Virus record (IMG/VR): IMGVR_UViG_3300009103_000001
Coordinates: 146,158 to 210,157 of that record
Length of the DNA stretch: 64,000 bases
Direction: 5' to 3' (one strand)
The position numbers and the translations under genes were made by a program. Below the pieces are notes generated by a model, which searched no databases, was not told the origin of the DNA, and saw only the letters and a list, made by a program, of their open reading frames with translations. Positions 17,124 to 64,000 of this stretch are shown one piece after another (the first letter of the stretch is position 1; each line of letters begins with the position of its first letter).

Positions 17124-17816
17124 ATGAGTTTTGGAGATAAGAATTTTACATATGGTCCTAGAATAATAAAGGGTGGTTTGGTATTCTATGTAGATGCAGC
17201 AAATCCTAAATCTTATGTTAGTGGAGATACAACAACTAATGACTTAATTTCAAATATTACTGGAACGCTAGAAAATGGTGTAGGTTACTCAATTGATAAT
17301 AACGGTAGTTGGTCATTTGACGGTAGTGATGATAATATATCTTGTGAACCAATAAATGAAATAAATAATGTAACATCATTAACATTTTCGTTTTGGGGTA
17401 AAAAGAATGGGTCAGGAGAGGTATTAGGGTTCAACACGATTCAAGATGTCACCACAGATAAAGTAGTTCTTTACTGGTGGTCAAATGGAATTGTTTATTT
17501 TGCTTGTAGAAATGGGGCATCAAATGTAAGTCCTAGCATTTCATTATCATATGATACTAATTGGCATCATTTTGTGGGTGTTTATGTTGGTGGGGGTAAT
17601 TTAAAATTATATGTTGATGGGGAATTATCTGATACTGAAAGCGGTGCACCAGCATCCCTAAGTTCAAATATTGGTGATAATTTAACCATTGGTTATGTTA
17701 ATAATAGTAACTATTCAAAAGGAAACATATCAAATGTTAAAATATATAATAGGGCGCTTTCACAAACAGAAATAACACAAAACTATAACGCACTAAAAGT
17801 AAGATTCGGATTATAA
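17124..17816 (+). CDS. LamG/concanavalin-A-like domain protein (1 module)
   Basis: GLVFYVDAAN.KSY, SFDGSDD, WHHFVGVY, LYVDG and ISNVKIYNRALS motifs. Confidence 0.85.
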   Translation: MSFGDKNFTYGPRIIKGGLVFYVDAANPKSYVSGDTTTNDLISNITGTLENGVGYSIDNNGSWSFDGSDDNISCEPINEINNVTSLTFSFWGKKNGSGEVLGFNTIQDVTTDKVVLYWWSNGIVYFACRNGASNVSPSISLSYDTNWHHFVGVYVGGGNLKLYVDGELSDTESGAPASLSSNIGDNLTIGYVNNSNYSKGNISNVKIYNRALSQTEITQNYNALKVRFGL

Positions 17817-20614: not shown

Positions 20615-20626
20615 TATTTAAATGAT

Positions 20627-24277: not shown

Positions 24278-24326
24278 AAATAAAATAATATATTTATAAT
24301 AATAACAATAAAAAAAACAATAAATT

Positions 24327-24590
24327 ATGTCACATAAATATGAACACAGAAATTTTATGATTTTCAATGTAAGTGAATTGGGTTCTGTTAACTTTTCAGA
24401 AGTTTTGGAATCTTCAATTAATACAGTTAGAAAATCCATAGATGGAACACAAACATTCGTTAAATGGGATGATGAAACAATACCACCTTCGGTTGATGCT
24501 TTAACAACAAAAGATGGTCCACATCTTTACGAAGATATGTTAGCAATATTATCAACTTCTGGTTGGACAAATACAGAAATAGTTGAGTAG
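24327..24590 (+). CDS. Small LamG-cluster-associated protein (possible fibre chaperone)
   Basis: 87-aa ORF with its own ATATTTAT motif; VRKSIDGTQTFVKW motif. Function inferred from context only. Confidence 0.6.
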   Translation: MSHKYEHRNFMIFNVSELGSVNFSEVLESSINTVRKSIDGTQTFVKWDDETIPPSVDALTTKDGPHLYEDMLAILSTSGWTNTEIVE

Positions 24591-24592
24591 TT

Positions 24593-26821: not shown

Positions 26822-29800
26822 ATGGCGAACGAATTTGTAATAAAGAACGGTTTTATCTCCAAGGGAGATTCTATAGTTAATGGAACCATTTCTGGTGAAA
26901 CATTAAATCTTACAACAATACCGACAAACGATAATTCTCAAACACAAGTATTAGTTAGAAATAATACCACAGGTGTGGTAGAATATAGAGACGCATCATC
27001 ATTAAGTGGTGGGTCAGGGACAAATACATTTGTAACAGGAACAACTTTCGCTAGCAATCAATTTGTTACCACAAGAAATGATGGTGTAGATGTATTAAAA
27101 TTTAGTGGTGGGTCAAACGTAACTTTATCCAACCCATCTTCAAACCAAATTAAAATAGATGTTTCTTTACCACCATCTATGAATACGTATGTAACTGGTT
27201 TTACATACAACGATAATAACACATTTACAATATTTGATAACGTTGGTGGGGTATTCCCAGCAACAATTAATCAAGTAAGTGGTTTAACGGTTAATGGTGA
27301 TATTACAGTAACAGGTATATCTAATTTAAATACTGTAACCGCCACCACAATTGATTTTGATTTAAATTATACTGGTGCAACGGCAGAAGGTAGATTGTCT
27401 TGGAACGGAGATGATGGGACACTTGATTTAGGAATGGGTGGTGGAAATGTAACCCAACAAATTGGTCAAGAAATATATTATAAAATTAAAAATCAAAGTG
27501 GGGCAACAATATCTAATGGTAGGGTTATTAGAAATGCGGGTTCGCTTGGTGCATCAGGAAGAATATTAGGTGAGTATATGATTGCGGATGGTACATATCC
27601 TTTCGCAAAAACTTTAGGTATTGCAACAGAAGATATCGCAAATGGTGACGAAGGTTTTGTTACTGAATTTGGTGTTGTTAGAGGAATTGACACCACAGGT
27701 TCTATTTATGGTGAATCTTGGTCAGATGGTGATGTATTATATGTGTCTCCAACCATTGCTGGTGGATTAACAATCGTTGAACCAACCGCACCGAATCAAG
27801 TTTTAGAAATGGGCGTTGTATTAAATTCGGCTATTAATGGTTCTATATTTGTAGATAGACATCTTTCTACTAAGTTAGGTGATATTAGTGATGTAGAAAC
27901 CACAGGTTGTACAAATGGTGATTTAATTGTTTATAACTCCGCAACCACTGTTTGGGAATATAGTAAAGTATTAAATGGTGATTATGATATTAACGGGACA
28001 TTGTCTGCAACAACATATTATGGTGATGGTTCTAATTTAACTGGAATATCTACACAAATAGATACTGGAAATGTTCTTTGGGTTGATAATATATTTGGAA
28101 ACGATGGTACTGCATTAGTAGATAGACAAGATAGACCTTGGGCTAGTATCGCCACCGCTATTAGTAATGCATCTACAAATGATACTATATTAGTTAGACC
28201 AGGTGATTATGTTGAATCATCGTTTACGTTAAACCCAGCGACATCATTAGTAAGTCAAGGTGGGGCTAAAGTAACATCTATCAGTGCGTCAACTACTACA
28301 GGTAATTTTATTACTATTTCAGGTTCTTCTTATATGGAAGGATTTACAGTTTATACCCCCACAGATGATTCCGCAGCATTATATATGAACGACTCAACCG
28401 CTGGTATTGTAACCACTTTAAATGATGTACATTTTAAAGGTTCAAGTACAGTATCACCACCTTTAGGTAAGGGTGTTGTTATGGATACGGGATTAGCTGG
28501 TAATGGTAAAATTATATATAGAGAACTTAGATATGGTGGTGGTAATTTAAATATATTAGCTGAAGTTAATAAAGGTATTTTTGCATTAGATGGTATGCAT
28601 GTACCAGGTGGAGGAACAGTTAATAAAGCCATCCAAATGAATGGTGGTAGAGGTCAATTAATTAATGTTAATGTTGGTAACCCCTCTTGCGATACTGCAT
28701 TAAGTGTTAGTGGTACATCTTCAAACAAACCAGTTGTTGCGGGATTTGGTTTTAACATATTTAATGTTCCAATAGGGATAGAAATAACATCAGATGACTA
28801 TGATGTTGAGGTTCAACAAGGTAGATTAGATGCTGGAACTACAAACGTATTAGTGTCAAGTGGTGTTACAGGGTCAAATGGTAAATTAAATCTAACCTCA
28901 TTTTCAATGGATTCAACAAAGTTGTCTATTCCGTATGGTTGGGTTGATTCACCACACACATTTCAATTTTCAGATATTGGTAATTCACAAAATATTGAAC
29001 CTATTTTAAGAAGTTGGTCAAACTTTGAGGTTGGTCATGCAAATAAGGGGTTTGAAACCAATCTTGGTCGTGGTTCTGAATATCAGAATGGGTTACATGT
29101 TCATAGTAGTGGAACAACAGGTACAACACACCTTTCAATGTCTGCCAAAACAGAGGGTGTTACTTGGTCTTTTGAGTCATTAACCGCTGGAGAACAACTT
29201 TATATTGGTAGTGAAGAAAAATATTCTAATGGTGAATTTGTTAGATTTAACGGTTTTGAGGTTGGTTATACTGGTTCGACTGGTGGGACATATACAATAG
29301 AATATTATTCTGGTGGTACTTGGGTAGATGTAAAATATCAAGTAGTACACCATAATTTAGGTTATAATTACGCAAATACATTGTTTTCTAGGTCGGTTGA
29401 TTCTTTGGAGGATATTAGGATTGGTATAGATGAGAATAGTGGTTGGGAAAGTACAACACTTTTTGGTCATGAGGCAAAATGGATTAGAATTACAATGGTT
29501 ACACCTCCAGCATCCTTACCCCAATTTGATTTATTGTGGTTGGAACCATCACATACAGAAGTTAATGATAATGGTATATTAAATTTTTACGGTAATGCTC
29601 TATATAGGGACACATTAGTTTCTGCTGGTAATATATTTGGTTTAGATGGTGCGGTTACAGATGCATCAATAACGGTTGGTTCTACGGTAACTTGGGACCA
29701 TATTATGGAAAACTCACAATTTAATACTTCGGGTATGATGGGCACTCAACCAGGTGATGCAATAATGTTACAAAGTATTCTACCTAAAGGTACTTGCACA

Positions 29801-30211
29801 GCATACCCTTTAAGAGTAATTATACATTATATTTTAACAGGTAGTGGCCCATTAACTACTTTACCAGAAATAACTTTATCCGTTGTTGGGAAAGAGACTT
29901 ATAATAATTTTAACGCAGACCCAGCAGGTGGATTGGCACCAACAAGGAGAACTTTAACAAATACAAATGATTTAACTACTGGTGGTGAGGAAGTAAATAT
30001 AGAATTAGGAGAACTAGCTGATTTTTCATCAGAATATCTTTCTGTTACTGAAGAATATGATTTTGACATATCTTCATTATATGAAAGTGATGGGGTATTT
30101 ATAAGAATAGAATTTTTTGATGAGGGTGTACCCTCACAAACAATAACATTTCCCGCAATTGAAGCTTCAATTGTTAAATGGGCATTGGGTGATAGAATAA
30201 GAGTAGAATAA
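26822..30211 (+). CDS. Tail fibre/spike protein, paralog of the 12176-17122 protein
   Basis: Shares PTNDNS.TQ...EY, TFVTGTTFASNQ, SATTYYGDGSNLTGIST and the beta-helix entry motif (LWVDNIFGND...RPWASI...VRPGDY). Confidence 0.75.
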   Translation: MANEFVIKNGFISKGDSIVNGTISGETLNLTTIPTNDNSQTQVLVRNNTTGVVEYRDASSLSGGSGTNTFVTGTTFASNQFVTTRNDGVDVLKFSGGSNVTLSNPSSNQIKIDVSLPPSMNTYVTGFTYNDNNTFTIFDNVGGVFPATINQVSGLTVNGDITVTGISNLNTVTATTIDFDLNYTGATAEGRLSWNGDDGTLDLGMGGGNVTQQIGQEIYYKIKNQSGATISNGRVIRNAGSLGASGRILGEYMIADGTYPFAKTLGIATEDIANGDEGFVTEFGVVRGIDTTGSIYGESWSDGDVLYVSPTIAGGLTIVEPTAPNQVLEMGVVLNSAINGSIFVDRHLSTKLGDISDVETTGCTNGDLIVYNSATTVWEYSKVLNGDYDINGTLSATTYYGDGSNLTGISTQIDTGNVLWVDNIFGNDGTALVDRQDRPWASIATAISNASTNDTILVRPGDYVESSFTLNPATSLVSQGGAKVTSISASTTTGNFITISGSSYMEGFTVYTPTDDSAALYMNDSTAGIVTTLNDVHFKGSSTVSPPLGKGVVMDTGLAGNGKIIYRELRYGGGNLNILAEVNKGIFALDGMHVPGGGTVNKAIQMNGGRGQLINVNVGNPSCDTALSVSGTSSNKPVVAGFGFNIFNVPIGIEITSDDYDVEVQQGRLDAGTTNVLVSSGVTGSNGKLNLTSFSMDSTKLSIPYGWVDSPHTFQFSDIGNSQNIEPILRSWSNFEVGHANKGFETNLGRGSEYQNGLHVHSSGTTGTTHLSMSAKTEGVTWSFESLTAGEQLYIGSEEKYSNGEFVRFNGFEVGYTGSTGGTYTIEYYSGGTWVDVKYQVVHHNLGYNYANTLFSRSVDSLEDIRIGIDENSGWESTTLFGHEAKWIRITMVTPPASLPQFDLLWLEPSHTEVNDNGILNFYGNALYRDTLVSAGNIFGLDGAVTDASITVGSTVTWDHIMENSQFNTSGMMGTQPGDAIMLQSILPKGTCTAYPLRVIIHYILTGSGPLTTLPEITLSVVGKETYNNFNADPAGGLAPTRRTLTNTNDLTTGGEEVNIELGELADFSSEYLSVTEEYDFDISSLYESDGVFIRIEFFDEGVPSQTITFPAIEASIVKWALGDRIRVE

Positions 30212-47150: not shown

Positions 47151-48176
47151 TTACCAATCGAATTTTATGTCATTTGGTGAGTCATAGTACCTCACTGAAT
47201 AACCACCATTAAAATCGTCATAATCCCACATGTCATCGAAATCATCATTAGATTCAAACCTAGTGATATCCTCTACAGTTTCATCGTCTTCGTCATCACC
47301 CAACCACTCAAAATCATCAACATAGTGTTGTTCTTCCGAATGATTTTCAGATATAGGAGTACGACCAAACATAGAGGACCATAGGTTTTTCTTTGGTTTA
47401 TCGGACCTAACATATTTAGCTTCACCTAAAACATCAACTATTTTAAGACCCAATTCGAAAGCGTTTTCAACATCCTCAACAAGGACATATTCACTTTTGG
47501 TGTGATACCTATAGTACCCCGCCGCTAAGTTAAGACAAGAGAAATCGAATTTTTCGATTAACTGCCATATGTCAGTGTAAGGATGTTTAGCCCAATCATT
47601 AATACCGTGTTCAAGTATTAAAGGGCTCACTTTCTTACCAAAGTCGGTGTCAACACCAAACAAGTCCTTACTCATTAGAGACATACTCATAGAGTTTCCC
47701 TCTGGGGAGTCGTATTGAATGGCGTAACCGACATCTTTGAAGAATTGTGGGTCCGCGTAACGAGAACCCAAACACCCAATCTCTTCTGATACAAAAAAGG
47801 CAGCTTTAACGTTGTCCAATTTGTCCAACATCTCAAGACAAAGAAAGACACCACACTTATCGTCACCACCGATACCCGATGGCTCCTTAGTTTCACTGTC
47901 AATTCCAGTCAAGGTTAACCTACCTTGTTTGTCACTAGATTCTACAACTTTTAGATTATGGTTGATGTGATGAACGGTATCAGTATGAGAAACAAAACAA
48001 GGATAAAACTCTGCCTCACCTTTTGTAACATACACATTATTGTGTCCATCGATTGTATAATCGAAGCCTTTCTCTTCCAAAACGTCCTTTAGGTATTGAA
48101 CCATAAGGTCTTCTTCCCTTGAATGTGTCGGAACAGAAAGAACCTCTTTTAATCTATTTAATTTACTTTCAGTCAT
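47151..48176 (-). CDS. M20/M28-like zinc peptidase
   Basis: SHTDTVH, GGDDKCGV, VSEEIG and YTD motifs; final YH. Confidence 0.8.
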   Translation of the reverse strand: MTESKLNRLKEVLSVPTHSREEDLMVQYLKDVLEEKGFDYTIDGHNNVYVTKGEAEFYPCFVSHTDTVHHINHNLKVVESSDKQGRLTLTGIDSETKEPSGIGGDDKCGVFLCLEMLDKLDNVKAAFFVSEEIGCLGSRYADPQFFKDVGYAIQYDSPEGNSMSMSLMSKDLFGVDTDFGKKVSPLILEHGINDWAKHPYTDIWQLIEKFDFSCLNLAAGYYRYHTKSEYVLVEDVENAFELGLKIVDVLGEAKYVRSDKPKKNLWSSMFGRTPISENHSEEQHYVDDFEWLGDDEDDETVEDITRFESNDDFDDMWDYDDFNGGYSVRYYDSPNDIKFDW

Positions 48177-53786: not shown

Positions 53787-56700
53787 ATGCCAAACGCAAT
53801 AAATCCAGATTCTTATAACATTGACTATTTCCCTTCATCTCTGTTGGGTGTAACAACCGCTGATGATTATAGAGAACATCTTTTTCTTAAAAACCTTGGT
53901 GGTGCTATAGCACCAGAATTAGTGAGTTCTCCAGCTGGTTCATTTTCAGTACCTTTTCAAGATAGAGGTGATTTTAAATCGATTAATTATGGTGGCATTG
54001 GTAATCCAGGTAATATTGAAGAATGGTTATCTGAAGGTGGTTTTCCTACTACAGTACATGAGGTTAGGGACATTGGTTTATTACAAGCACAAAATAAATA
54101 CGGACCACCAACAATATCAGCATATAATTGTCCAGAGTTAATACCAGAAGATACGGGATTCATACAATACCCAACGTCAAGTGGTGGTGATGATTATAAA
54201 ACAATTTTAATTAATGACGCAATTGATAGTAATGTTGGTTTGGGACCTGGAGCAACAATTAATTTCCCTTCAGAATTAAATGATATAGCAAAAGAGAGAA
54301 GAAAAGAGGAAGCGATTAATAGGGTTAAACTAAACGTAGAAGATAATGTATTAGGCAAGTTAAATTTGGACCCATTCGGTTTATTAGCAGGACAAGATTT
54401 AATTTTAAGAGATTATAAAATAACAACAAGAAGAAATATTGTTGGTAAAATATTTGATACTGTCGCTGATTCAGCTGGTTTTAACATACCAACAAGTCCT
54501 ATTAAAAAGGGTGCCTTTGGTAGATATGGTGATTTAGATAACGCTGAAACATATAAAGATTTATTAAAAGCTACTGGTTCAGGTACAAAAAGTTTATTAT
54601 TTGATTCTGTTGGAAAAAATAAATATGGACCACAATTACAAGAACCAAAAGGATTTATCGCTAATACAGTTGGTGCTGGACAGGCTCCACAACAAAATAC
54701 ATATTTAACAGACCCAACAGAACAAATACAAGAAGAGAAAAAGGCGAAAAGAAATAAACCATTAGTTGATAAAGTTAATCAAGCGATTGGTAAAGCTATT
54801 GATGCTGTCGCTGGTTCACAAGCGATAGGTAAAGAAGACGACCAACCACCTAGTGAATTTAAAAACCCAACGGTTGAACCAGAACTTAATAGTGAAGATT
54901 ATGGTTTTGATGGGTTACCAAATAGGTCTAAAGATACATGGGAATTGGCTGGACCTACTACTGAATTTGATATAGATGAAGGTAGTATAGGGACTAGAGC
55001 TCCATTTGGTCAACAAACTGATTTAGGTTTCTTTTCGTTAAAACAAGAAATGTTTTGGGGCTCCACACCTAAAGGTTCAACAAACCCATTTAAAAGAGGT
55101 ATTTTAAAATATACACAGGATTTAATAAACAACACAAATGATAACACAGATATAATAAGTAAAGCTAGATTTATTGGTGTGGTTAATGATGATAGTAATT
55201 TCGATTCAAAAACTAGAAAACATAAAAACTATTCAATGGGTAATACTGTATCTTCTGATGGAACTTATTGTCGTTCATGGTCTGTTAGAAACCCATATTT
55301 AAAAGTAGGTGATTTAATTAGACATGGGGCTAGTGATGGTGCTGGTGGTTTTAATAGTTTAACACGACCAGATAGGGATTTAAGTGTACTAGGAAACAAT
55401 GGTTTTGTTAAGGTTGCACCATATGTTGGTGAAAAACAAGGTGGTTATGATAGTGGTGGTAAGGTTTTAAACTTAGGTGACCCAACCATACAAAAATATA
55501 TGTTATCAATTGAAAATTTAGCTTGGCAAAATACAGAACATATATTAAAAGTACCACCATGTGAAGTTGGACCAAACGGTGGTAGAATAATGTGGTTTCC
55601 ACCATATGATATTAATTTTACAGATAACTCAAGTGTTAGTTGGGATACAACAAATTTTATTGGTAGAGGTGAGCCAATATATACATATAATAATACTGAA
55701 AGAATGGGTACATTAGCTTTTAAATTGGTTATTGACCATCCATTAGCAATTTCAGAACTAAGAGAACAAGGTGAACAGGCACTATTTCAATTTTTTGCAG
55801 GATGTAAAAACCCATTAGAAGAGGCAAGTGCTTTAATATCTGTGTCAGATATAGAAGAAGTTAAAATACAAAATACACAAACAAAGTTGTTCCCAAACCC
55901 AAAATACCAAGAAATTCAAACACAACCAGCAGGAGACCCACCATCACCAGTTAGTTTTTATTTTAGAAATGCGAGAAAAGGAGCTAAAGATACTGTTGGT
56001 ACACAACCAGACACAGAAATTAATGCTGGTTATTTATATGGTGACCCACCAACAGTATTACCATATATTGAAGAACAAACACCACAGGGACCAATAGGAG
56101 TATATAATCCAGCATTTTCTGGTGATGTGGCTGCAAACTATGAACAAAATCTTGATGACGCTAGAAATAAACTGGCTGTAGAAAGAATAACAGATGAAAT
56201 AATACCGTTTTTATTATCACCAAGAGGTAAAAGATTTACTATTAATATTGTTGGTAAAACTAGTGATGCAAATACATCAAGTTTTAATGAAAAATTAGGT
56301 GAAGCTAGAGCTAAAAATACCGAAGAATGGTTTTATCAACTTCTAAAAGGTAGTGAGTTGGGTACCGACCCAATAAAGGCTGAAAATCTCGGTTCAGAAG
56401 AAACATACCCAACAGAAACAACGTGGAAAGGCAGTAAGTTAAGATGGAATGTTTATTCGACAGGTGAAAAGGGGTCTTCTGATTCTGTAATAATAAACGA
56501 GGATGGTTCAACATCAATTGGCAGAGATGATAATAAAGTATATGGTGATACAGATTATAATGACCCAGGTGCGGTTAACGATAGAAGAGTAGATATAACA
56601 TTTACACATAACCCAGAAATAGATGATTCAATGATTGGACCTGCATCTGGAGAAAAAGAGTTTATATCTGTAACTACAACATCTGAAATAATACAACAAA

Positions 56701-58106
56701 GAGAAATTGACGCTGAAAGAAAAAAAGAATTGGAACAAATTGAACAAGCTAAAGTATTAGCGAGAAAGGCGTCACAATATATGGCTTGGGAATGTTCTTA
56801 TTTTGAGAAAATGAAACAAGATGACCCATTTGTGTATGATACACTAACACAAAAATTAAAATATTTTCATCCCGCATTCCACTCAATGACACCTGAAGGC
56901 TTTAATTCAAGGTTAACATTTTTAAAACAATGTACAAGACAAGGTCCTAATATTGCATCAAATGAACCAAATAATTTAGCATTTGGTAAACCACCTATAT
57001 GTGTATTAAGGGTTGGTGATTTTTATCATACAAAAATAGTTATTGACACAGTTAACTTAACATTTGACCCACTTATTTGGGATTTAAATCCAGAAGGAAT
57101 TGGGGTACAACCAATGGTTTGTAGTGTTGACCTTAACTTTAAGTTTATTGGTGGTTCATCATTAGGTGGACCAATAGCACAATTACAGAACGCCGTTGGG
57201 TTTAACTTTTTTGCTAACACAGGGTTATATAACCCAAGAACAATATATGAATCTGTGGGTGAATATAAGGCTAAAGAGGTGGACCCATCAACAGGTAAAG
57301 AAACAGAAACAAAAATAGATACACCAAATGAATCTAAACAACCATTTGGTTATGGAGCATTTATTGTACCAGGTGAGTCAATTCAAGATGGTGAGTTTAG
57401 TACTGAGGACCCAGTTAATGATTTTTATGAACAAAAACAAATACAAGCAGAAGCTGATAGAGCTAAAAAGGCTAAAATGGCACAAGCCGAAAGGGATAGA
57501 ATTGCGGCAAAAGAAGCGAAAGAGGCTAAAGAAGCCGCTATAGAGTCTGAAAAAGAAATAGCTAAAACATTTGGTAGTGTAACAAAGGCTACACTTAGGA
57601 ATTTAGGTGCCGGAAGTTGGTCCGAAACTGGTGTTTTATCTTTAGAGGTAGAAACAAGTGACCCATTTATAGTTTGGGATTCAGCACAACCAACAGACGT
57701 AAGTGGTACAGATAGTCCATTTAACTCTAATAATAAATATGGTACTGGTATTACGGCTTTAGTTGGTGAAGGTTTGAATGATGTTTTCTATTATTATCAA
57801 GACTTTGATAGTTGGGTTTCTTTTAATGGTACAAGTACTAAAAAAATTACTATTGTGTTTAAAAATTCATATAAAGCTTTAGATACCACGGGTAAAGGTA
57901 AAAATAGAAACTCAGAAAAAGTAGGAACTACACAATCTGTTAATGGTAAAACAATTTCGTTCACAATATTTGGTAAATTAATTGGTGATAGTGGTGAGGA
58001 TATAAAAGTTTCTACAAATATAACTTTTATAATGTCAGCAGAAGATAACGGTAAAACAAAAACATCATTTAATAATGAAAGCGAGATAATACCAACTACA
58101 ACATAA
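53787..58106 (+). CDS. Tail tube initiator / baseplate protein (gpU/gp48-54-like) with inserted OmpA-like domain
   Basis: WFPPYD..F.DNS.VSW..T.FIGRGEP.YTY and PP.C.LR.GDFY.TKI.I half-motifs flank an IVGKTS...FNEKLGEARA...NDRRVDI segment. Confidence 0.65.
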   Translation: MPNAINPDSYNIDYFPSSLLGVTTADDYREHLFLKNLGGAIAPELVSSPAGSFSVPFQDRGDFKSINYGGIGNPGNIEEWLSEGGFPTTVHEVRDIGLLQAQNKYGPPTISAYNCPELIPEDTGFIQYPTSSGGDDYKTILINDAIDSNVGLGPGATINFPSELNDIAKERRKEEAINRVKLNVEDNVLGKLNLDPFGLLAGQDLILRDYKITTRRNIVGKIFDTVADSAGFNIPTSPIKKGAFGRYGDLDNAETYKDLLKATGSGTKSLLFDSVGKNKYGPQLQEPKGFIANTVGAGQAPQQNTYLTDPTEQIQEEKKAKRNKPLVDKVNQAIGKAIDAVAGSQAIGKEDDQPPSEFKNPTVEPELNSEDYGFDGLPNRSKDTWELAGPTTEFDIDEGSIGTRAPFGQQTDLGFFSLKQEMFWGSTPKGSTNPFKRGILKYTQDLINNTNDNTDIISKARFIGVVNDDSNFDSKTRKHKNYSMGNTVSSDGTYCRSWSVRNPYLKVGDLIRHGASDGAGGFNSLTRPDRDLSVLGNNGFVKVAPYVGEKQGGYDSGGKVLNLGDPTIQKYMLSIENLAWQNTEHILKVPPCEVGPNGGRIMWFPPYDINFTDNSSVSWDTTNFIGRGEPIYTYNNTERMGTLAFKLVIDHPLAISELREQGEQALFQFFAGCKNPLEEASALISVSDIEEVKIQNTQTKLFPNPKYQEIQTQPAGDPPSPVSFYFRNARKGAKDTVGTQPDTEINAGYLYGDPPTVLPYIEEQTPQGPIGVYNPAFSGDVAANYEQNLDDARNKLAVERITDEIIPFLLSPRGKRFTINIVGKTSDANTSSFNEKLGEARAKNTEEWFYQLLKGSELGTDPIKAENLGSEETYPTETTWKGSKLRWNVYSTGEKGSSDSVIINEDGSTSIGRDDNKVYGDTDYNDPGAVNDRRVDITFTHNPEIDDSMIGPASGEKEFISVTTTSEIIQQREIDAERKKELEQIEQAKVLARKASQYMAWECSYFEKMKQDDPFVYDTLTQKLKYFHPAFHSMTPEGFNSRLTFLKQCTRQGPNIASNEPNNLAFGKPPICVLRVGDFYHTKIVIDTVNLTFDPLIWDLNPEGIGVQPMVCSVDLNFKFIGGSSLGGPIAQLQNAVGFNFFANTGLYNPRTIYESVGEYKAKEVDPSTGKETETKIDTPNESKQPFGYGAFIVPGESIQDGEFSTEDPVNDFYEQKQIQAEADRAKKAKMAQAERDRIAAKEAKEAKEAAIESEKEIAKTFGSVTKATLRNLGAGSWSETGVLSLEVETSDPFIVWDSAQPTDVSGTDSPFNSNNKYGTGITALVGEGLNDVFYYYQDFDSWVSFNGTSTKKITIVFKNSYKALDTTGKGKNRNSEKVGTTQSVNGKTISFTIFGKLIGDSGEDIKVSTNITFIMSAEDNGKTKTSFNNESEIIPTTT

Positions 58107-58112
58107 AAAATA

Positions 58113-58430
58113 ATGGCAAGAAGATATTACGATAGATACCAAGATTTTAAGGAAAATGGAAAAAGTACAACATTACCATTTTTAAAATTACCAGTGAAGA
58201 AAACAGATAAAAGAACTGTTACTGATAGCAGAACTAGATTTGACAAGATTAGTCAACAATATTATGGTACACCATACTATGGATGGTTAATTTTACAAGC
58301 TAACCCAGAATATGGTGGACTTGAGTTTGACATTCCTGAAAATACAATTATAATAGTACCATATCCTTTAAATACTTCTTTACAGGATTATCAGGCAGCA
58401 ATAACAAGATATAAGAGATTATATGACTAA
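58113..58430 (+). CDS. LysM-like baseplate protein (P2 gpX / T4 gp53-like)
   Basis: RFDKISQQYYG..YYGWLILQANP...IP..T.I.VP pattern and position. Confidence 0.75.
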   Translation: MARRYYDRYQDFKENGKSTTLPFLKLPVKKTDKRTVTDSRTRFDKISQQYYGTPYYGWLILQANPEYGGLEFDIPENTIIIVPYPLNTSLQDYQAAITRYKRLYD

Positions 58431-58441
58431 AAGTTTTTAAA

Positions 58442-61400
58442 ATGGGAGTATTAGATGGTCCAGAACCAAGAGTTTATTCAGATAATGGCATTAGATATAT
58501 TGACCCTAACCCTACTGATGAAATTATAAACCAAGAAGACTTAGTTATTTACGTTAATTTAAAGGCTAGGACAAAGGGTAGAAGTATAGTAACAAATACA
58601 GATGCTTCAATAATAGAAATAGAGGGTTTTAATTCTAATGTAGCAAAAGAAACAAATTTCACTTATCCTACCGGACAAAGTGAATTAACAACAGATTGGA
58701 CAAATATTGGTGGTGGTACATTATTACCTGGTGAAGACACTGGTGGTTTTGGTATTACAAATGTTAACATCGAATTTAAGTCTAGTTTCATGCCAAAGAT
58801 TGTAATAGATTTTGTGGACATTAGAGGTGCAACACTTTTTGAACAAGGGCCATGTTCACCTTACGCAGCATTTTTTCATTTACCATACCCAGTGTTTGAA
58901 TTAACAATAAAAGGTTATTATGGAAAACCAGTTAAATATACCTTAGCTTTAGTTAAGTTTAACACAAAGTTTAATGCTGATACTGGTAATTTCGAATCAA
59001 GGGGTGAATTTGTAGGGTATACATATGCTTTTTTAGCAGACATACCAATGGGGTATGTTATGGCAGCAACCTATATGACAAAACCACTTAATGGTAAAGA
59101 AGTTTTAAAAGAAAAATGGGACAAATTAAAACAAGAACACCCAGAATTAGCCAACACAACAGATGGATTACCAAACGAACCACTAACAATACAAGATTTA
59201 ATATTAAAATCACAAAAGTTAGAAAAATTAGCACCATCAATAAGAAGTAGTCCAGAAGTTAATACGTTAAATAAAATTAACGCAATTAAAGATGACTTCC
59301 AAAAGGTGATAGCATTAATTACAGAATACCAACGAAAATTTAAAGAAATGGGTGGTAAAAGTAAAAAAGGTGGTGATGGTTTAGGTAATAAAATGGTGAC
59401 AGAACTAAGTAATTTAACAAAACTAAATCAAGGTACTGAGGGTGACCCAGGATTATCGTTAATATATTTTGGTGATGGTACTGAAACATCATTTAAAACA
59501 AGCCTTATTGGTACAAAATTAACTTTATTAATTTCTGAATTACAGGCGGGCGGTGTAATAAATGATATTAATTTAACAAGTTTTATACCTGATATTACTA
59601 TAGAAAAAATAAATAATAATTGTGTAAATTTTTTGGGGGGAACTGATGATAGAACTCAGGAATCTTATATTGATATTGGTGAATCTGTTTTAGTACCATT
59701 AAATATACAATTAAAGAGTTTAGATGAGTTTAATAAAAAAATAAAAGACAATGTAAAAGATGAGATAAATAGAGTGGTTAAAAGTGAAGCAGGTTTAGGT
59801 TTTAACCCAAGTGTTAGAAATGTTTTTGCTATAATTTTAATAAATGTTGAAGTATTTTTAGAGTTAATGGTGGTAACATCTGAAAACGCTGAAAATGAAC
59901 ATAAAACTAACTCTGAAAATATTAAAGGTAGTTTAAGTAGTACTAATAATATTTTAAATAATAAAAATAAAGATTCAGTAATATACCCATGGCCAACTTA
60001 TTATGAAGTTACAACTGGTACTCTTAAGGGTGAAAAAGAAACATACCCAGGTGAAAATATAAATTTTATTGCTTGGCCAGAAGTTATTTTTGTTGAAGAT
60101 TTTGTTAACGCTTTAACAAAACTTAGAATAGAATTAGATATTATAGCTGGTGATTTTGAAGATATGGCGGGCTTCGATAATTATAGACCAATATCACCAT
60201 TTGAAACACAAGCTTTTGGTGATGAAAGGGCACCAAATAGATGGTTTAATTTTGAACAATCTGGTGAACAGTTTATTAATGAGATTTGGAGAATTTTAGG
60301 TGAAAATGCTTTTTTAGTTGGTGACTATACTATGATTAATAGTCTTACTTTATGGAAGTCACAATTAGGTTTAAGAGATACATGGGGATATAATACACAA
60401 ACACAAACACCAGCAGGGATACCAAACCCATCAATGGGTGGGCCACCGAGATTCAAAGACTTAGATTTAGGTATTTCAAATGGTAAAATAACAAATAGAT
60501 ATAAATATACAGAACAAGAAGGTTGGGGTAAAAGAGGTGCAAGAGGTAAGATTACTACAACAAATAAAGAAAGAATGAAACAGTGGGGATATGTAGATGG
60601 TTTAAATTTCATCAACATATGTAAAGACGATGTTATATTAACATATGTAAAGAATTTAACAAATACAGAAGGTGGTGGCATAACAGATGAAGATGTGGAT
60701 TCAATAACAGAAAGTATAATAAGTTATATGTCAAAAAATAGTGATTTTACTGAACAAACATTTGACGAATGGAGAAACACAGCTTCAGCTGAAATAAATA
60801 ATGGTGTAGCTAATTCAGATTTTATACCAGACCCAGCAGTAGAACCCGAATATTGGAAAAATGCTTCACAGGGAGAAGATGGTGGTGAGGGTATGTACAA
60901 AGATAATCCAGACCCATTACCAGATAGTGCCGGAAACTCAGTATTAACACTAAAGGGTCCTATTAAGTTAAATGAGAACCTTGAAGTATCAGAAACATAT
61001 ATTTCAGCTAACCCACACAGAAATGCAATGTCTGGTGTTAGACTATTAGAACCAACGTCTAGTGAGTTAGATGGTAGAAATATTGATTTAAATATTGATA
61101 CCATTCCTGGTGGACAAGCCATGATTAGTGCTTATGAAGAAAATTATAGTGACACAACAGAATCAGACACAGATTCAGAAGAAACAAAAACAGGCGCTGT
61201 AAAAGGAAATTTATGTAGAATACTTTTAGATGGTAGAGGAAAAGGTGAATTAGGGTCTGTACAAAAAAGAAAAGAGCCAATAGCTTATCATAGTGAGATA
61301 AAAAAAACAAGTTTTACTAGCCCATATGATGTTCAAATTAGTTGTAGTTCCAATGCGAATTGTGGGTTCGCTAGAGATGAGTATAGGTTAAATGCAGACC

Positions 61401-63880
61401 CAAAAACAGGTTTATTATCATACGGTAAAGATTATAAATCAAACTTTTTTGTACAGGCCTATGAAAAAGGTTCAGGAAGTGATGAAGGTAGAGCGTTTTG
61501 GCATTTAGGTTCATCTAGAACTGTTTGGTATAACGCCCCAACAACCATTGGAAACGGTTTACAAGCTAATGCTGTTTGGGCAGATTTTATTGGAGCTACC
61601 GCTTGGTCAACAGATGGTTTAGCAGATTTATTATGGCAAACACCGTTATGGACACTTAATTACCCTTTATATAAGAGACCAGCATACACCATTACACTTG
61701 GATTTAAAACAGGTGGTGGGCCTAAGAATTATGTCTCACTATCTGAGAGACTCAATGCTGGAAATAAAGATGACCCACAAACATCTATTTCTACAGAAGA
61801 AAACTATAGTAGAAATTTTGATACTTGGTGGGGTTTAAATCAATATACAGTTAAAAGATTTGACCCAAATAACCCAGATGCGGCTGGCGGTCAGTTTGAT
61901 AAAACCTATAGAAATTATGGTAAACTAAAAGACCAAATTAAACCCTTAGCTTATTTATTTATAATGTCACAGGGTTTAAATGACCCAAATGATAGTTTTG
62001 GTTATTTTCCACCATACGATGGAATTTCTTTTAACCATATTGGTTGTTTTTCTAGTTTTGGTAGTTCTACTTGTATGGCAGACGTACCAAAATCTTGGGT
62101 TTTAGTTATTGGAGCAATTTTATGGAGAGCAAAGGAAAGTGGTAATTTAAATTGGTATTTAAGTTCAAATAATGATAACATAGAACCATCAAAAGCTTTA
62201 CCAAATGGGTGGAATAATGCGAATAAATCAGTTGGTATAGATGATTTAAATGACCCTGTTTGGTTTTTCCATAATTCCATCTCAAAACCATGGCATTGGG
62301 GTGGTTGTGTTTTTGATAACTGGGGAGCTACTCAAACTGGTGGAGGAATAATAGAGTGGAATGGTGGTGCTACTAGGTGGTCTAGAAAGTATTTAGGACA
62401 AACAGATACTGGTGTTGATAGGTGGGCTGGCACAGAATATTATGACCCAGATTCTACCTCCCCAAACACCCCAAAGGGTACCGATGACAATAAATGGCGT
62501 CGTACTAATTTTGCCATAGGACCTGACGTAGATTTTAGTTCACTTCATGGTGAGGATACGGGTAGTGTTAAGGAATTTACTAAAACTGAGCCAAGTTATA
62601 GAGGATGGACAAAATCACATGTTGGGGGTCAAATAGGGAGTGTAAAACGTTCAGACCAAAGTCTTGGAACATTACCAAAAAGGGAAGCGGAAGGGATTTT
62701 TGTTAAAGTTAATAGTAACATGCGTGGAGAACATAATATAAATAAAGGGTTATTCGATGTTTGTAGACCAGACCAAATACCAGTAATATATTATACACCA
62801 GGAGCAAACTATACGAATAAAAGAGATTCATGGGTTGGACAAGGACAAAATGACGGACCATATAGATTTCCATATAGACCAAAAACATTAGTTATTAGTG
62901 ATATTTCTGGTCAAGAAAAAAATCAAGACATTAAGGGGACAACTTATTCTTGGCCTAGTGGGGGTAACTCTAATTGGGTTAAAAATGCGACATATGATAA
63001 TAGATATCTTGATTTGAAGAGAGATGTTAAGGAATTAATGTATTTACCATCTAGTATAAAAAAAGATTTTATAAAAGCTTTTGAAGATTTCGCTAATGAT
63101 GCTCAGAGTTGGTTACCAGTTGTAGACCCATTAAATTGGGCAGCTAGTAGTAAAATGTTAGGTGAATATGAGGGAATAGATGGTACTGTCGCAGCATACC
63201 AAGGCATTAAGGGATTTCTTAGTGAAACAGAAAGAAATAATTTGAGTTGGGGTAAGGGTACTACCAAATCAACAGGATTTCAATTAGCTTATAGATTGGA
63301 CGTTAAACCGACATTGAGGACTTATAGTGTTGGTACATTAGGTAAAAGTGCGGCTAAGTCAACAGAGACCAACGCAAGAAGTGAGGCTGAAAGTGATGCC
63401 ATTACTAGTGGTGCTGTCTGTTTTACTTATGGACATAAAGTTAGACAAACATTTAATAAAGTTAAAAATATAGAAGATATAAATATTGGGGACACGGTTT
63501 TAAGTTATGACTTAGAGGAAAATGAATTTTTAGAAAAAGTGGTTAAAGATATTAAAATTAATTATATGGATAAATTAATTAAAATAATATTAAAAAATGG
63601 TATACATATAACCACCACAACACAACACCCATTTTTTATAAAAAATAAAGGATTAGCTTCTTATGATAATAGTGGGGTATCAACAGAAATGGGTGGAACT
63701 ATAAAAAAATTAAATATTAACGATATTTTATACTATTATAATGATAATGAGTTTATTGAAGTAGAAATTAAAAATATAATATTAATAAATAAACAAAAAA
63801 AGGTTTTTGATTTAGAGATAGAAGGTGGTAGTTCTTATATTGTAAATAATGTTTATACACATCAGGGTACTAAAAATTAA
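58442..63880 (+). CDS. Baseplate hub-like protein with C-terminal Hint domain
   Basis: 1812 aa; follows the LysM-like gene; N-terminal GFGI..V.I.F...F.P.I.I.FVD.RG region is hub-like. Confidence 0.6.
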   Translation: MGVLDGPEPRVYSDNGIRYIDPNPTDEIINQEDLVIYVNLKARTKGRSIVTNTDASIIEIEGFNSNVAKETNFTYPTGQSELTTDWTNIGGGTLLPGEDTGGFGITNVNIEFKSSFMPKIVIDFVDIRGATLFEQGPCSPYAAFFHLPYPVFELTIKGYYGKPVKYTLALVKFNTKFNADTGNFESRGEFVGYTYAFLADIPMGYVMAATYMTKPLNGKEVLKEKWDKLKQEHPELANTTDGLPNEPLTIQDLILKSQKLEKLAPSIRSSPEVNTLNKINAIKDDFQKVIALITEYQRKFKEMGGKSKKGGDGLGNKMVTELSNLTKLNQGTEGDPGLSLIYFGDGTETSFKTSLIGTKLTLLISELQAGGVINDINLTSFIPDITIEKINNNCVNFLGGTDDRTQESYIDIGESVLVPLNIQLKSLDEFNKKIKDNVKDEINRVVKSEAGLGFNPSVRNVFAIILINVEVFLELMVVTSENAENEHKTNSENIKGSLSSTNNILNNKNKDSVIYPWPTYYEVTTGTLKGEKETYPGENINFIAWPEVIFVEDFVNALTKLRIELDIIAGDFEDMAGFDNYRPISPFETQAFGDERAPNRWFNFEQSGEQFINEIWRILGENAFLVGDYTMINSLTLWKSQLGLRDTWGYNTQTQTPAGIPNPSMGGPPRFKDLDLGISNGKITNRYKYTEQEGWGKRGARGKITTTNKERMKQWGYVDGLNFINICKDDVILTYVKNLTNTEGGGITDEDVDSITESIISYMSKNSDFTEQTFDEWRNTASAEINNGVANSDFIPDPAVEPEYWKNASQGEDGGEGMYKDNPDPLPDSAGNSVLTLKGPIKLNENLEVSETYISANPHRNAMSGVRLLEPTSSELDGRNIDLNIDTIPGGQAMISAYEENYSDTTESDTDSEETKTGAVKGNLCRILLDGRGKGELGSVQKRKEPIAYHSEIKKTSFTSPYDVQISCSSNANCGFARDEYRLNADPKTGLLSYGKDYKSNFFVQAYEKGSGSDEGRAFWHLGSSRTVWYNAPTTIGNGLQANAVWADFIGATAWSTDGLADLLWQTPLWTLNYPLYKRPAYTITLGFKTGGGPKNYVSLSERLNAGNKDDPQTSISTEENYSRNFDTWWGLNQYTVKRFDPNNPDAAGGQFDKTYRNYGKLKDQIKPLAYLFIMSQGLNDPNDSFGYFPPYDGISFNHIGCFSSFGSSTCMADVPKSWVLVIGAILWRAKESGNLNWYLSSNNDNIEPSKALPNGWNNANKSVGIDDLNDPVWFFHNSISKPWHWGGCVFDNWGATQTGGGIIEWNGGATRWSRKYLGQTDTGVDRWAGTEYYDPDSTSPNTPKGTDDNKWRRTNFAIGPDVDFSSLHGEDTGSVKEFTKTEPSYRGWTKSHVGGQIGSVKRSDQSLGTLPKREAEGIFVKVNSNMRGEHNINKGLFDVCRPDQIPVIYYTPGANYTNKRDSWVGQGQNDGPYRFPYRPKTLVISDISGQEKNQDIKGTTYSWPSGGNSNWVKNATYDNRYLDLKRDVKELMYLPSSIKKDFIKAFEDFANDAQSWLPVVDPLNWAASSKMLGEYEGIDGTVAAYQGIKGFLSETERNNLSWGKGTTKSTGFQLAYRLDVKPTLRTYSVGTLGKSAAKSTETNARSEAESDAITSGAVCFTYGHKVRQTFNKVKNIEDINIGDTVLSYDLEENEFLEKVVKDIKINYMDKLIKIILKNGIHITTTTQHPFFIKNKGLASYDNSGVSTEMGGTIKKLNINDILYYYNDNEFIEVEIKNIILINKQKKVFDLEIEGGSSYIVNNVYTHQGTKN
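63419..63865 (+). other. Hint (intein-like) domain, 149 aa, no endonuclease, ends HQ followed by G
   Basis: Block A CFTYGHKV (Cys1660), IEDINIGD.V, block B TTQHPF, block F KVFDLEIEG..SY and block G VYTHQ, then GTKN-stop. Confidence 0.9.
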
Positions 63881-63884
63881 CTAA

Positions 63885-64000
63885 ATGACTTACCAGACAA
63901 GAATATCAGCACTAAAAATAGGTGGTAAAACAGTAGAACAGGAACAGGATGAAGTTGATGTAAATAATCCTAAAGCTGATGCTGCTATAGGGGATTTAAA
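63885..64000 (+). CDS. Start of next ORF, runs off the right edge (3' end missing)
   Basis: ATG 4 nt after the hub stop; MTYQTRISALKIGGKTVEQEQDEVDVNNPKADAAIGDL is open to the window edge. Confidence 0.6.
   Translation, partial: MTYQTRISALKIGGKTVEQEQDEVDVNNPKADAAIGDL

What the first reader, a model, noticed from the sequence alone, without database searches (positions are those of the whole stretch)
63419..63880. Baseplate hub capped by a splicing-incompetent Hint domain (C1...HQ/G + 3 residues): possible self-cleaving or self-ligating tail protein
Seen: a 149-aa Hint with Cys1, TxxH and penultimate His, ending in Gln rather than Asn. It is followed by Gly instead of Cys/Ser/Thr, and the protein stops 4 residues later. 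No endonuclease is present, and the DNA is visibly more AT-rich than the rest of the gene. Known: canonical splicing needs a +1 nucleophile. Hedgehog and bacterial intein-like Hints instead cleave at their N-terminus through a thioester that can be captured by an external nucleophile. Inference: the hub's new C-terminus (...AITSGAV) is autocatalytically exposed or ligated to another baseplate protein, small molecule or host target. This would be an undescribed maturation or covalent-attachment step in a phage tail.
Basis: partly seen in the sequence, partly recalled or inferred. Interest (0 to 1): 0.82.

Follow-up and report, generated by a model that had tools for sequence, protein, structure and literature searches.

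The report
Self-cleaving intein-like cap on phage hub
A giant tail (baseplate-hub-like) protein of an uncultivated marine phage ends in a small intein-like (BIL-type Hint) domain that most likely cuts itself off. It sits at the seam where related phages continue, in one chain, into a cell-wall-degrading module, so this is a new setting for a known self-processing domain.

Summary
ORF 58442-63880 (1812 aa) ends in a 149-aa Hint domain (63419-63865: Cys1, T-x-x-H, His-Gln), then Gly-Thr-Lys-Asn and a stop. There is no endonuclease, and GC is 21.5% against 33.7% for the rest of the gene.

It is not a broken or mis-assembled intein. Two independent assemblies and contigs from four metagenomes agree. 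24 distinct relatives also stop 0-15 residues after the Hint.

In sequence and predicted fold it is closest to bacterial intein-like (BIL) domains: Tetrahymena BIL2 and Clostridium thermocellum BIL.

Across relatives the N-terminal cleavage residues are kept (Cys/Ser1 24/24, block-B His 24/24). The C-terminal Asn is kept in only 14/24.

New context: the next gene (starts 63886) encodes a ~450-aa adapter plus a tail lysozyme. In more distant relatives this adapter is fused in frame to the hub, with no Hint. The Hint therefore marks a fusion/fission seam. Relatives carry 1-3 alternative lysin modules after it, and some split relatives have no Hint.

Best reading: a self-removing BIL cap, acting through a thioester that is then hydrolysed. 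Transfer of the hub onto the lysin module is possible but unproven.

The parts
58113..58430 (+). Small (105 aa) LysM-like baseplate protein gene just upstream of the hub gene
   Evidence: Weak PHROG hits to baseplate wedge and hub families (E 1.4e-3 and 3.8e-3). The same 104-106-aa gene precedes the hub gene in relatives.
58442..63880 (+). Giant tail protein gene (1812 aa, hub-like N-part plus Hint). The identical protein occurs on two independent assemblies.
   Evidence: The N-terminal ~650 aa are conserved in 62 homologues (A1). The fold model has weak similarity to baseplate hub and tube proteins.
63125..63139 (+). D-P-L-N-W motif (residues 1562-1566), the last conserved motif of the hub body and shared with fused homologues
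63140..63418 (+). 93-aa variable linker, which would be the C-terminal tail of the processed hub (ends ...S-G-A-V). 63206-63418 is a strain-variable patch.
   Evidence: In a cold-seep strain (run X3), 34 of 36 substitutions and all 14 gap positions fall in 63206-63418 and stop at the codon before Cys1. The region is also variable between relatives.
63419..63865 (+). BIL-type Hint domain, 149 aa. Cys1 at 63419-63421; block-B Thr at 63617-63619 and His at 63626-63628; penultimate His at 63860-63862; terminal Gln at 63863-63865.
63866..63880 (+). Four-residue C-flank (G-T-K-N) and TAA stop. It is not conserved in length or sequence among relatives.
63886..64000 (+). Start of the next gene, cut by the window end. 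The full product is 868 aa in L001:13081-15687: a ~450-aa adapter ('DOWN' domain) plus a Phage_lysozyme2 domain. The adapter is homologous to the C-terminal half of fused hub proteins.
   Evidence: From 63882 onward the sequence also occurs in a second context in three metagenomes.

Best explanation
The last 149 residues of the 1812-aa hub-like tail protein are a bacterial-intein-like (BIL, type-A-like) Hint domain that works as a single-turnover self-cleaving cap.

Proposed mechanism:
1. After folding, Cys1660, assisted by the block-B Thr/His, attacks the Val1659-Cys1660 peptide bond (N-S acyl shift). This converts the bond into a thioester.
2. The thioester is then resolved mainly by water or a small thiol.
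3. This releases the mature hub (residues 1-1659, ending ...SGAV) and a free 153-residue Hint-GTKN fragment.
4. Cyclisation of the terminal Gln, which would trim the four-residue tail, is optional and is not under selection in the family.

The domain sits in the variable linker where more distant homologues continue, as one polypeptide, into the adapter-plus-peptidoglycan-hydrolase module. Here that module is a separate downstream gene. The Hint therefore marks a gene-fission and module-exchange seam. The processed hub tail is the surface that meets the separately made lysin module or modules.

Shown: domain identity, conserved catalytic residues, absence of an extein, position at the seam, and dispensability in some lineages.
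Inferred: that cleavage happens, that hydrolysis is the main outcome, and any role in assembly.
For: - Hint identity and BIL affinity. Pfam. PDB profile hits to BIL2 (6tmm/6y75, E 2e-16) and Cth BIL (2lwy, 1.4e-13), against >= 7e-9 for inteins. Model pLDDT 83.9 with best Foldseek matches BIL2 (TM 0.81-0.88) and 2lwy, ahead of inteins and Hedgehog.
- Selective conservation of step-1 residues in 24 distinct hub Hints: position 1 is Cys in 21 and Ser in 3; block-B His 24/24; Thr 20/24. The terminal Asn is kept in only 14/24, and C-flanks of 0-15 residues are unrelated to each other.
- Known chemistry. BILs lack the +1 nucleophile and give mainly cleavage products (PMC7664689; PMC4031507).
- The gene end is real. 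The identical protein is on an ENA contig and a JGI contig. Contigs from marine and cold-seep metagenomes cover the junction, and brine-metagenome fragments cover parts of it, with no joint or frameshift. Stops close two frames.
- Seam position. The downstream 868-aa protein aligns at 39-41% identity (E ~1e-90) to the C-terminal part of single-ORF homologues that have no Hint. Alignment A3 places the Hint in the linker between the D-P-L-N-F/W motif and the adapter's N-terminal motif.
- Vertical retention. 15 of 17 hub Hints form one clade (SH-aLRT 97), and the Hint is kept across hubs only 33-42% identical.
- BIL hallmark of sitting in a hypervariable region. The strain-variable patch 63206-63418 ends at the codon before Cys1.
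Against: - There is no biochemical or proteomic evidence. Cleavage is inferred from residue conservation only.
- The window's copy has Gln instead of Asn, and Pfam scores are only just above the gathering cut-offs.
- The Hint is dispensable. Split relatives without a Hint exist (L025, L059-L064). One of them (L088) keeps a relic of the Hint's last ~10 codons after a deletion. Any role in assembly therefore cannot be essential. The same conservation pattern fits a harmless passenger that merely has to remove itself.
- Hydrolysis and transfer cannot be told apart in silico.
- The 'hub' assignment of the host protein is weak.
Confidence: 0.6

Rival explanations
1. Trans-ligation or conjugation. 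The Hint-generated thioester at the hub C-terminus is captured by an amine of the separately translated downstream lysin module. The amine would be its N-terminal alpha-amine after Met removal (Thr here), or a Lys side chain. This would covalently re-create the hub-adapter-lysin chain that fused homologues encode directly. In relatives it would let one hub be joined to 2-3 alternative lysin modules.
For: - Rosetta-stone evidence. The downstream protein is homologous to the part that follows, in frame, in fused relatives, and the Hint sits at that junction.
- Hint-bearing loci carry 1-3 tandem paralogues. They have near-identical N-termini but different hydrolase domains: VanY, Phage_lysozyme2, Amidase_2.
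- Precedent. Type A BILs ligate through attack of a free alpha-amine on the thioester (PMC4031507). The closest solved relative, BIL2, conjugates its N-flank to Lys of other proteins (PMC8616854).
- Every downstream protein has a small second residue (T, S, G, A or V), so Met removal would expose the amine. In 4 independent sister pairs, Hint presence goes with G/S/T and absence with A/V.
Against: - Split relatives without any Hint carry the same module genes, so a covalent link is not needed.
- The residue-2 association is not significant (p 0.125). It is weakened further by two Hint-bearing loci with Ala (L086, L087).
- A small second residue is common in any proteome.
- BILs mostly yield cleavage products.
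- Nothing here shows the two proteins even touch at these ends.
Confidence: 0.17
2. Inactive or decaying relic. The Hint no longer cleaves and stays on the hub as a structural appendage, or it is on its way to being lost.
For: - The terminal Asn is replaced by Gln here and is lost in 10 of 24 relatives.
- There are repeated losses and a deletion relic.
- Composition is AT-rich and K/N/I-rich.
- Pfam scores are marginal.
Against: - The Cys/Ser1 nucleophile and the block-B His are invariant in 24 distinct copies, across hubs that are only 33-42% identical. Drift would have removed them.
- The Hint DNA is almost invariant between strains, while the adjoining linker is highly diverged.
- The predicted fold is confident and complete.
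Confidence: 0.12
3. Hedgehog-like transfer. The thioester is resolved by a small molecule or an envelope component (lipid, sterol-like compound or peptidoglycan amine), leaving a modified hub C-terminus.
For: Same first-step chemistry. Hedgehog Hint is a structural match (1at0, E 2.3e-7).
Against: - There is no adduct-recognition region after the Hint; only 4 residues follow.
- BILs are clearly closer than Hog domains.
- Processing would occur in the infected cell's cytoplasm during assembly.
Confidence: 0.05
4. An ordinary intein broken by mis-assembly, sequencing error, read-through or frameshift, with the next gene as its true C-extein.
For: The next gene is homologous to what follows in fused relatives and starts only 5 nt after the stop. 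One relative (L087) does have a frameshifted hub gene.
Against: - The sequence is identical in independent assemblies and metagenomes, with no indel or joint at 63860-63890.
- Stops close two frames, and the third frame only opens at the ATG.
- All 24 distinct Hint-bearing relatives also terminate right after the Hint. Their intergenic geometries differ, including TAATG stop/start overlaps.
- Fused relatives have no Hint at all.
Confidence: 0.02

Closest known systems
Type A bacterial intein-like (BIL) domains (Amitai 2003; Dassa 2004; Cth BIL4 structure 2lwy; Tetrahymena BUBL BIL2, 6tmm/6y75)
   Same: These are the best sequence and structure matches. Shared features are Cys1, T-x-x-H, a penultimate His, no +1 nucleophile, no endonuclease, location in a hypervariable part of a non-housekeeping protein, and in most relatives a C-terminal His-Asn.
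   Different: - It lies at the extreme C-terminus with only 0-15 residues after it, so there is no C-flank to release or splice.
- The window's copy ends His-Gln.
- The host is a phage contractile-tail protein.
- It lies at a seam where homologues are fused to the next gene's product.
Pre-toxin HINT (PT-HINT) of polymorphic toxin systems (Zhang et al. 2012, PMC3482391)
   Same: A Hint autopeptidase stands between a constant N-terminal 'stalk' and variable C-terminal effector modules, with alternative cassettes encoded downstream. Recombination appears to occur around the Hint.
   Different: - Here the effector modules are separate genes with their own start codons, not the C-terminus of the same polypeptide.
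- The Pfam PT-HINT score is below its cut-off (27.0 vs 27.7).
- Zhang et al. report the HINT peptidase never with the contractile T6SS or PVC systems, whereas this is a contractile-tail component.
- The effectors are peptidoglycan hydrolases, not toxins with immunity genes.
Class 1 mini-inteins
   Same: Same fold and same step-1 residues, and no endonuclease. Some inteins also end in Gln (PMC4031507).
   Different: There is no C-extein and no +1 Cys/Ser/Thr. It is not inserted in a conserved site of an essential protein. Homologous 'empty' alleles are either fused without a scar or simply end.
Hedgehog C-terminal autoprocessing (Hog) domain
   Same: It is a C-terminally located Hint that uses only the N-S acyl shift to free, and possibly modify, the N-terminal part.
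   Different: There is no sterol-recognition region. The sequence and structure similarity is more distant than to BILs.
C-terminal intramolecular chaperone domains of phage tail spikes and fibres (Peptidase_S74), and T4 gp5 self-cleavage (recalled from general knowledge, not tested here)
   Same: The concept is shared: a phage tail protein matures by autocatalytic removal or cleavage of a C-terminal part during assembly.
   Different: The fold and chemistry are unrelated. No homology was detected in the Pfam scan.

Membership tests
HINT superfamily | Hint fold (horseshoe beta structure) | tested here: met
   AlphaFold model pLDDT 83.9. Foldseek gives 66 PDB matches at E <= 1e-3; the 50 best listed are all Hint-fold proteins, with TM up to 0.88.
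HINT superfamily | N-terminal Cys/Ser nucleophile and block-B T-x-x-H | tested here: met
   Cys1660 and T-T-Q-H. Conserved in 24/24 (nucleophile and His) and 20/24 (Thr) relatives.
HINT superfamily | Pfam family score above the gathering cut-off | tested here: met
   On the 193-aa piece: Intein_splicing 36.0 vs 35.8, AXH 33.3 vs 33, Hint 30.2 vs 29.7. All are marginal. On the whole protein the scores fall below the cut-offs.
Canonical (class 1) intein | Cys/Ser/Thr at +1 of a real C-extein | tested here: not met
   The +1 residue is Gly and the protein ends 4 residues later. Relatives have 0-15 unrelated residues.
Canonical (class 1) intein | C-terminal Asn after the penultimate His | tested here: not met
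   It is His-Gln here. Gln is tolerated in a few inteins (PMC4031507).
Canonical (class 1) intein | Insertion inside a conserved host protein whose intein-less alleles are colinear across the site | tested here: inconclusive
   Fused homologues are colinear across the seam without a Hint. The site is a variable linker, though, and no allele has a Hint with both flanks in frame.
Type A BIL domain | Closer to BIL domains than to inteins or Hog domains | tested here: met
   PDB profile search: BIL2 at 2e-16 and Cth BIL at 1.4e-13, against the best intein at 6.9e-9. Foldseek gives the same order.
Type A BIL domain | C-terminal His-Asn without a +1 nucleophile | tested here: inconclusive
   The window's copy is His-Gln followed by Gly. 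13 of 24 relatives have His-Asn, mostly followed by K, V, A or M; three have S or T followed at once by the stop.
Type A BIL domain | Located in a hypervariable region of a non-conserved protein | tested here: met
   The strain-variable patch 63206-63418 abuts Cys1. The linker is also variable between relatives.
Type A BIL domain | Autocleavage or splicing activity | not testable with these tools
   This needs expression and MS. It is inferred only from residue conservation.
PT-HINT of polymorphic toxins | Hint directly upstream of a C-terminal toxin domain in the same polypeptide | tested here: not met
   There is a stop 4 residues after the Hint. The Pfam PT-HINT score is 27.0, below the 27.7 cut-off.
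Hedgehog Hog domain | Adduct (sterol) recognition region after the Hint | tested here: not met
   Only G-T-K-N follows.
Baseplate hub protein (gp27 / gpD / Mu gp43-44-like) | Hub or tube-type beta-barrel fold at the N-terminus and position in the baseplate gene block | tested here: inconclusive
   Gene order is consistent. The N-terminal model has pLDDT 64. Its top Foldseek hits are baseplate proteins of phages Milano, Mu and 7-7-1, but at E 8e-3 to 2e-2 and low TM. There is no sequence hit in PDB, Pfam or PHROGs.

The most novel reading that the evidence does not exclude
The Hint is a natural protein ligase handle. It converts the hub's C-terminus into a thioester, which is captured by the N-terminus (or a Lys) of the separately encoded adapter-lysin protein or proteins. 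This would post-translationally rebuild the single-chain hub-lysin found in fused relatives. In phages with 2-3 downstream paralogues it would allow one hub to be armed with different cell-wall hydrolases.
Probability: 0.17. Interest if true: 0.9.

Novelty: new variant of a known kind. Interest (0 to 1): 0.62.

Why it matters
BIL domains have been known since 2003, but their biological roles are largely unsettled. Here a BIL sits at a defined seam in a conserved phage machine, and nature supplies all three controls:
- fused homologues without a Hint;
- split homologues with a Hint;
- split homologues without a Hint.

That makes the question 'what does a terminal BIL do?' directly testable. If it only cleaves, it is a new autocatalytic maturation step for a contractile-tail hub. 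It would also contrast with the reported absence of HINT peptidases from contractile (T6SS/PVC) systems in the polymorphic-toxin survey. If it ligates, it would be a natural ATP-independent trans-ligation system that assembles a virion component from modules. That would interest both phage biology and protein engineering.

The survey also shows that terminal BILs ending ...HNK-stop, and tandem BIL arrays, are very abundant in metagenomic proteins. The question therefore reaches well beyond this phage.

Tried and rejected
- tblastn of the 1812-aa protein against GenBank phages found nothing.
- PHROGs and Pfam on the neighbouring giant proteins, and on hub residues 650-1660, found nothing.
- PDB profile searches with the hub N-terminus (A1) and the adapter domain (A4) gave only noise or nothing.
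- An ESM Atlas search on residues 1-240 returned a chance hit (rhabdovirus nucleoprotein) and only vague phage leads.
- I searched for the alternate upstream context seen joined at 63882 in runs X2-X4. It was not in the window, not in the fetched loci, and not in the viral or metagenome collections.
- I tested whether the downstream protein's second residue (the exposed N-terminal residue after Met removal) tracks Hint presence. Four of four independent pairs went the same way (p 0.125). Two further Hint-bearing loci then turned out to have Ala, so I treat this as unproven.
- P0024 was first counted as Hint-less. L087 shows it is a frameshifted gene with the Hint still present, so I corrected the count.
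- Contexts of other terminal-Hint proteins (Rhs protein P0184, double-Hint protein P0095) were uninformative.
- Read-through or frameshift into the next gene is rejected from the sequence.
- Recent horizontal acquisition as the cause of the AT-richness is not supported. The bias lies mainly in codon positions 1+2 and is shared by relatives.
Full report
**1. The observation**

The + strand ORF 58442-63880 encodes an 1812-aa protein. Its last 153 residues read Cys-Phe-Thr-Tyr-Gly-His ... Thr-Thr-Thr-Thr-Gln-His-Pro ... Val-Tyr-Thr-His-Gln, followed by Gly-Thr-Lys-Asn and TAA.
- Cys1 codon 63419-63421
- block-B His 63626-63628
- His-Gln 63860-63865
- stop 63878-63880

A second TAA (63883-63885) closes the frame of the next gene just before its ATG at 63886. 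Read-through or a frameshift therefore cannot extend the protein.

Pfam recognises the piece as a Hint (Intein_splicing, AXH and Hint, each just above its gathering score; PT-HINT just below) and finds no endonuclease. The segment is the most AT-rich 447-nt window of the gene, with GC 0.215 against 0.337. The bias lies mainly in codon positions 1 and 2 and recurs in six relatives. It reflects a Lys/Asn/Ile-rich composition rather than recent import.

**2. It is real, not an assembly artefact**

The identical protein is encoded on an 18.8-kb ENA contig and on the 210-kb JGI contig whose end is this window. Near-identical DNA occurs in marine, cold-seep and brine metagenomes. The contigs laid on 62800-64000 show no joint, insertion or deletion around the stop.

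**3. What kind of Hint**

A profile of 17 related C-termini (A2) matches solved BIL domains best:
- Tetrahymena BUBL BIL2 (6tmm/6y75), E 2e-16
- Clostridium thermocellum BIL (2lwy), E 1.4e-13
- the best intein, 6.9e-9

The AlphaFold model (pLDDT 83.9) gives the same ranking by Foldseek. BIL2 comes first (TM 0.81-0.88), then 2lwy, then mini-inteins, then Hedgehog. It is therefore a BIL-type Hint.

BILs lack the +1 nucleophile and mostly give N- and C-cleavage products (PMC7664689). Type A BILs can still splice, through attack of the freed alpha-amine on the thioester. C-terminal Gln can replace Asn in some inteins (PMC4031507).

**4. Relatives**

A whole-length search found 62 homologues. Together with loci fetched from viral and metagenome collections, this gives 24 distinct hub proteins ending in a Hint.
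- All stop 0-15 residues after the Hint, and these tails are unrelated to each other.
- Position 1 is Cys in 21 and Ser in 3.
- The block-B His is invariant, and the Thr is present in 20.
- The terminal Asn is present in only 14. The window has Gln; others have Ser, Thr or no recognisable block G.

Selection has therefore kept the first step (acyl shift and thioester) but not C-terminal cleavage. Fifteen of 17 hub Hints form one clade (SH-aLRT 97) together with four short proteins, at least three of which are hub C-terminal fragments. Two divergent Hints (P0016, P0023) fall elsewhere, by replacement or as a long-branch artefact.

**5. The seam**

The window ends 115 nt into the next gene. The ENA contig shows that this gene encodes 868 aa, with a Phage_lysozyme2 domain at residues 491-657. 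Its first ~450 residues (here called the adapter or DOWN domain) match residues ~1600-2070 of longer homologues (2357-2566 aa) at 39-41% identity and E ~1e-90. They also match P0028.

In more than 30 fetched loci, one ORF of 1500-2800 aa holds the hub N-terminus, the adapter and usually a peptidoglycan hydrolase (VanY, Amidase_2, M23 and others). None of these has a Hint.

Alignment A3 shows that in fused proteins the last hub motif (D-P-x-N-F) is followed, after a short variable linker, by the adapter's N-terminal motif. In the fused protein P0028 that linker is only 9 residues. In the window the same interval holds, in order:
1. a 93-aa linker;
2. the Hint;
3. the stop;
4. the start of the next gene.

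The Hint therefore sits at a fusion/fission seam.

**6. Locus architecture**

In Hint-bearing relatives the hub gene is followed by one to three tandem adapter genes. Their N-termini are almost identical within a genome, but they carry different hydrolase domains: VanY, Phage_lysozyme2 or Amidase_2. Split loci without a Hint also exist and have the same adapter genes (L025, L059-L064).

On a hub tree rooted with fused forms, the fused state is outside. Two Hint-less split forms branch first, then the window's protein. The Hint pattern needed five changes as first scored, which fits one gain and several losses.

Two corrections came later:
- One apparent loss (P0024) is a frameshifted gene that still has its Hint.
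- One real loss (P0019, locus L088) left the last ~10 Hint codons behind the new stop.

The Hint is therefore long-lived but dispensable, and the region recombines.

**7. Strain-level variation**

In the cold-seep run X3 a 3.2-kb contig covers 62800-63911. It carries 36 substitutions and 14 gap positions. Thirty-four substitutions and all the gaps lie in 63206-63418, which is the last 71 codons of the linker, and they stop at the codon before Cys1. The Hint itself has one synonymous change. This matches the description of BILs as residents of hypervariable regions (PMC7765530). It means the tail that would be exposed by cleavage exists as diverged alleles.

**8. Mechanism**

The best-supported account is self-removal. 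Cys1660 and the block-B Thr/His convert the Val1659-Cys1660 bond into a thioester. The thioester is then hydrolysed, freeing a 1659-residue hub and a 153-residue Hint fragment.

The same conservation pattern is expected in either case:
- the Hint helps assembly, for example by holding the tail until the lysin module docks; or
- it is a harmless passenger that must leave for the hub to work.

The existence of Hint-less relatives favours a non-essential role.

The main rival is transfer of the hub onto the adapter protein. Three things make it attractive:
- the fused homologues;
- the multiple alternative modules;
- the documented conjugating activity of BIL2 (PMC8616854).

I found no decisive support for it. 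All adapter proteins have a small second residue. A G/S/T-versus-A/V association with Hint presence held in four independent pairs (p 0.125), but two more Hint-bearing loci broke it.

**9. Wider distribution**

The Hint profile finds 25,260 cluster representatives at E <= 1e-3, and 345 at <= 1e-30. Among the top 147:
- 79 carry a complete Hint ending within 20 residues of the C-terminus, typically ...L-V-H-N-K-stop;
- many have 2-7 Hints in tandem;
- two are Rhs-repeat proteins ending in a Hint.

Terminal BILs are therefore common but uncharacterised.

Full-text searches found no paper describing a Hint or BIL on a phage tail or baseplate protein. The survey of polymorphic toxins states that HINT peptidases are never found with the contractile T6SS and PVC systems (PMC3482391).

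**10. Verdict**

This is a BIL-type Hint (a known kind) in a new setting: the extreme C-terminus of a contractile-tail hub-like protein, at a gene-fission seam in front of lysin modules. Autocleavage is likely but untested, and ligation is possible. The 'hub' label for the host protein rests on gene order and weak fold similarity only.

Noticed in passing
window 63206-63418: In a cold-seep metagenome strain that is otherwise ~99.7% identical, this 213-nt stretch carries 34 substitutions and 14 gap positions. The divergence stops at the codon before the Hint's Cys1, and the Hint DNA has one synonymous change. It looks like a swapped linker allele with the Hint as one recombination boundary.
   Followed up: partly
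window 63882-64000: In three metagenomes (runs X2-X4) the 5' end of the downstream gene is also joined to a different upstream sequence. That sequence ends in AAAGGAGAT, a Shine-Dalgarno-like motif, and has higher depth. This suggests a second copy or allele of the adapter gene start. It probably explains why the JGI contig ends here. The other context was not found in any collection searched.
   Followed up: partly
L088:5336-5565: The Hint-less relative P0019 keeps, about 60 nt after its stop, a relic encoding the last ~10 residues of a Hint (...W-F-A-N-G-T-L-V-K-E-stop). A short chimeric ORF follows. This is a footprint of Hint deletion or recombination.
   Followed up: partly
L087:8900-9830: The relative P0024 looked Hint-less, but its hub gene is interrupted by a frameshift. 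A complete Hint (ending H-N-K-P-A-Y-L) is still encoded in another frame, followed by two adapter genes. This may be a sequencing error or a pseudogene.
   Followed up: partly
L019:7956-14507; L023:7908-13315; L004:2708-7586: Relatives carry two or three tandem adapter genes with nearly identical first ~45 residues but different cell-wall hydrolase domains (VanY, Phage_lysozyme2, Amidase_2). This is a cassette-like arsenal behind the hub gene.
   Followed up: yes
proteins P0063-P0209: Hundreds of metagenomic proteins carry this BIL subtype as tandem arrays of 2-7 adjoining copies, or as one or two copies at the extreme C-terminus ending ...H-N-K-stop. These include a common ~750-790-aa architecture and two Rhs-repeat proteins (P0184, P0190) that end in the Hint with no toxin domain after it.
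   Followed up: partly
window 17816-26740: Three consecutive large ORFs (932, 1216 and 715 aa) are packed with Laminin_G_3 / ConA-like lectin repeats. One also has Sialidase-N and BppU_N-like hits. They are probably tail fibre or receptor-binding proteins.
   Followed up: no
window 12176-17122, 26822-30211, 53787-58106: Giant ORFs (1648, 1129 and 1439 aa) have no Pfam or PHROG match. The 1439-aa one directly precedes the LysM-like gene and has a Lys/Ala/Glu-rich coiled-coil-like stretch. A same-sized gene (1447-1496 aa) holds this position in relatives, so it may be a tape-measure-like protein.
   Followed up: no
window 47151-48176 (-): A peptidase-family gene (phrog_4191, E 8e-43) lies on the opposite strand, in the middle of the tail gene block between the tube gene and a hub-like gene.
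   Followed up: no
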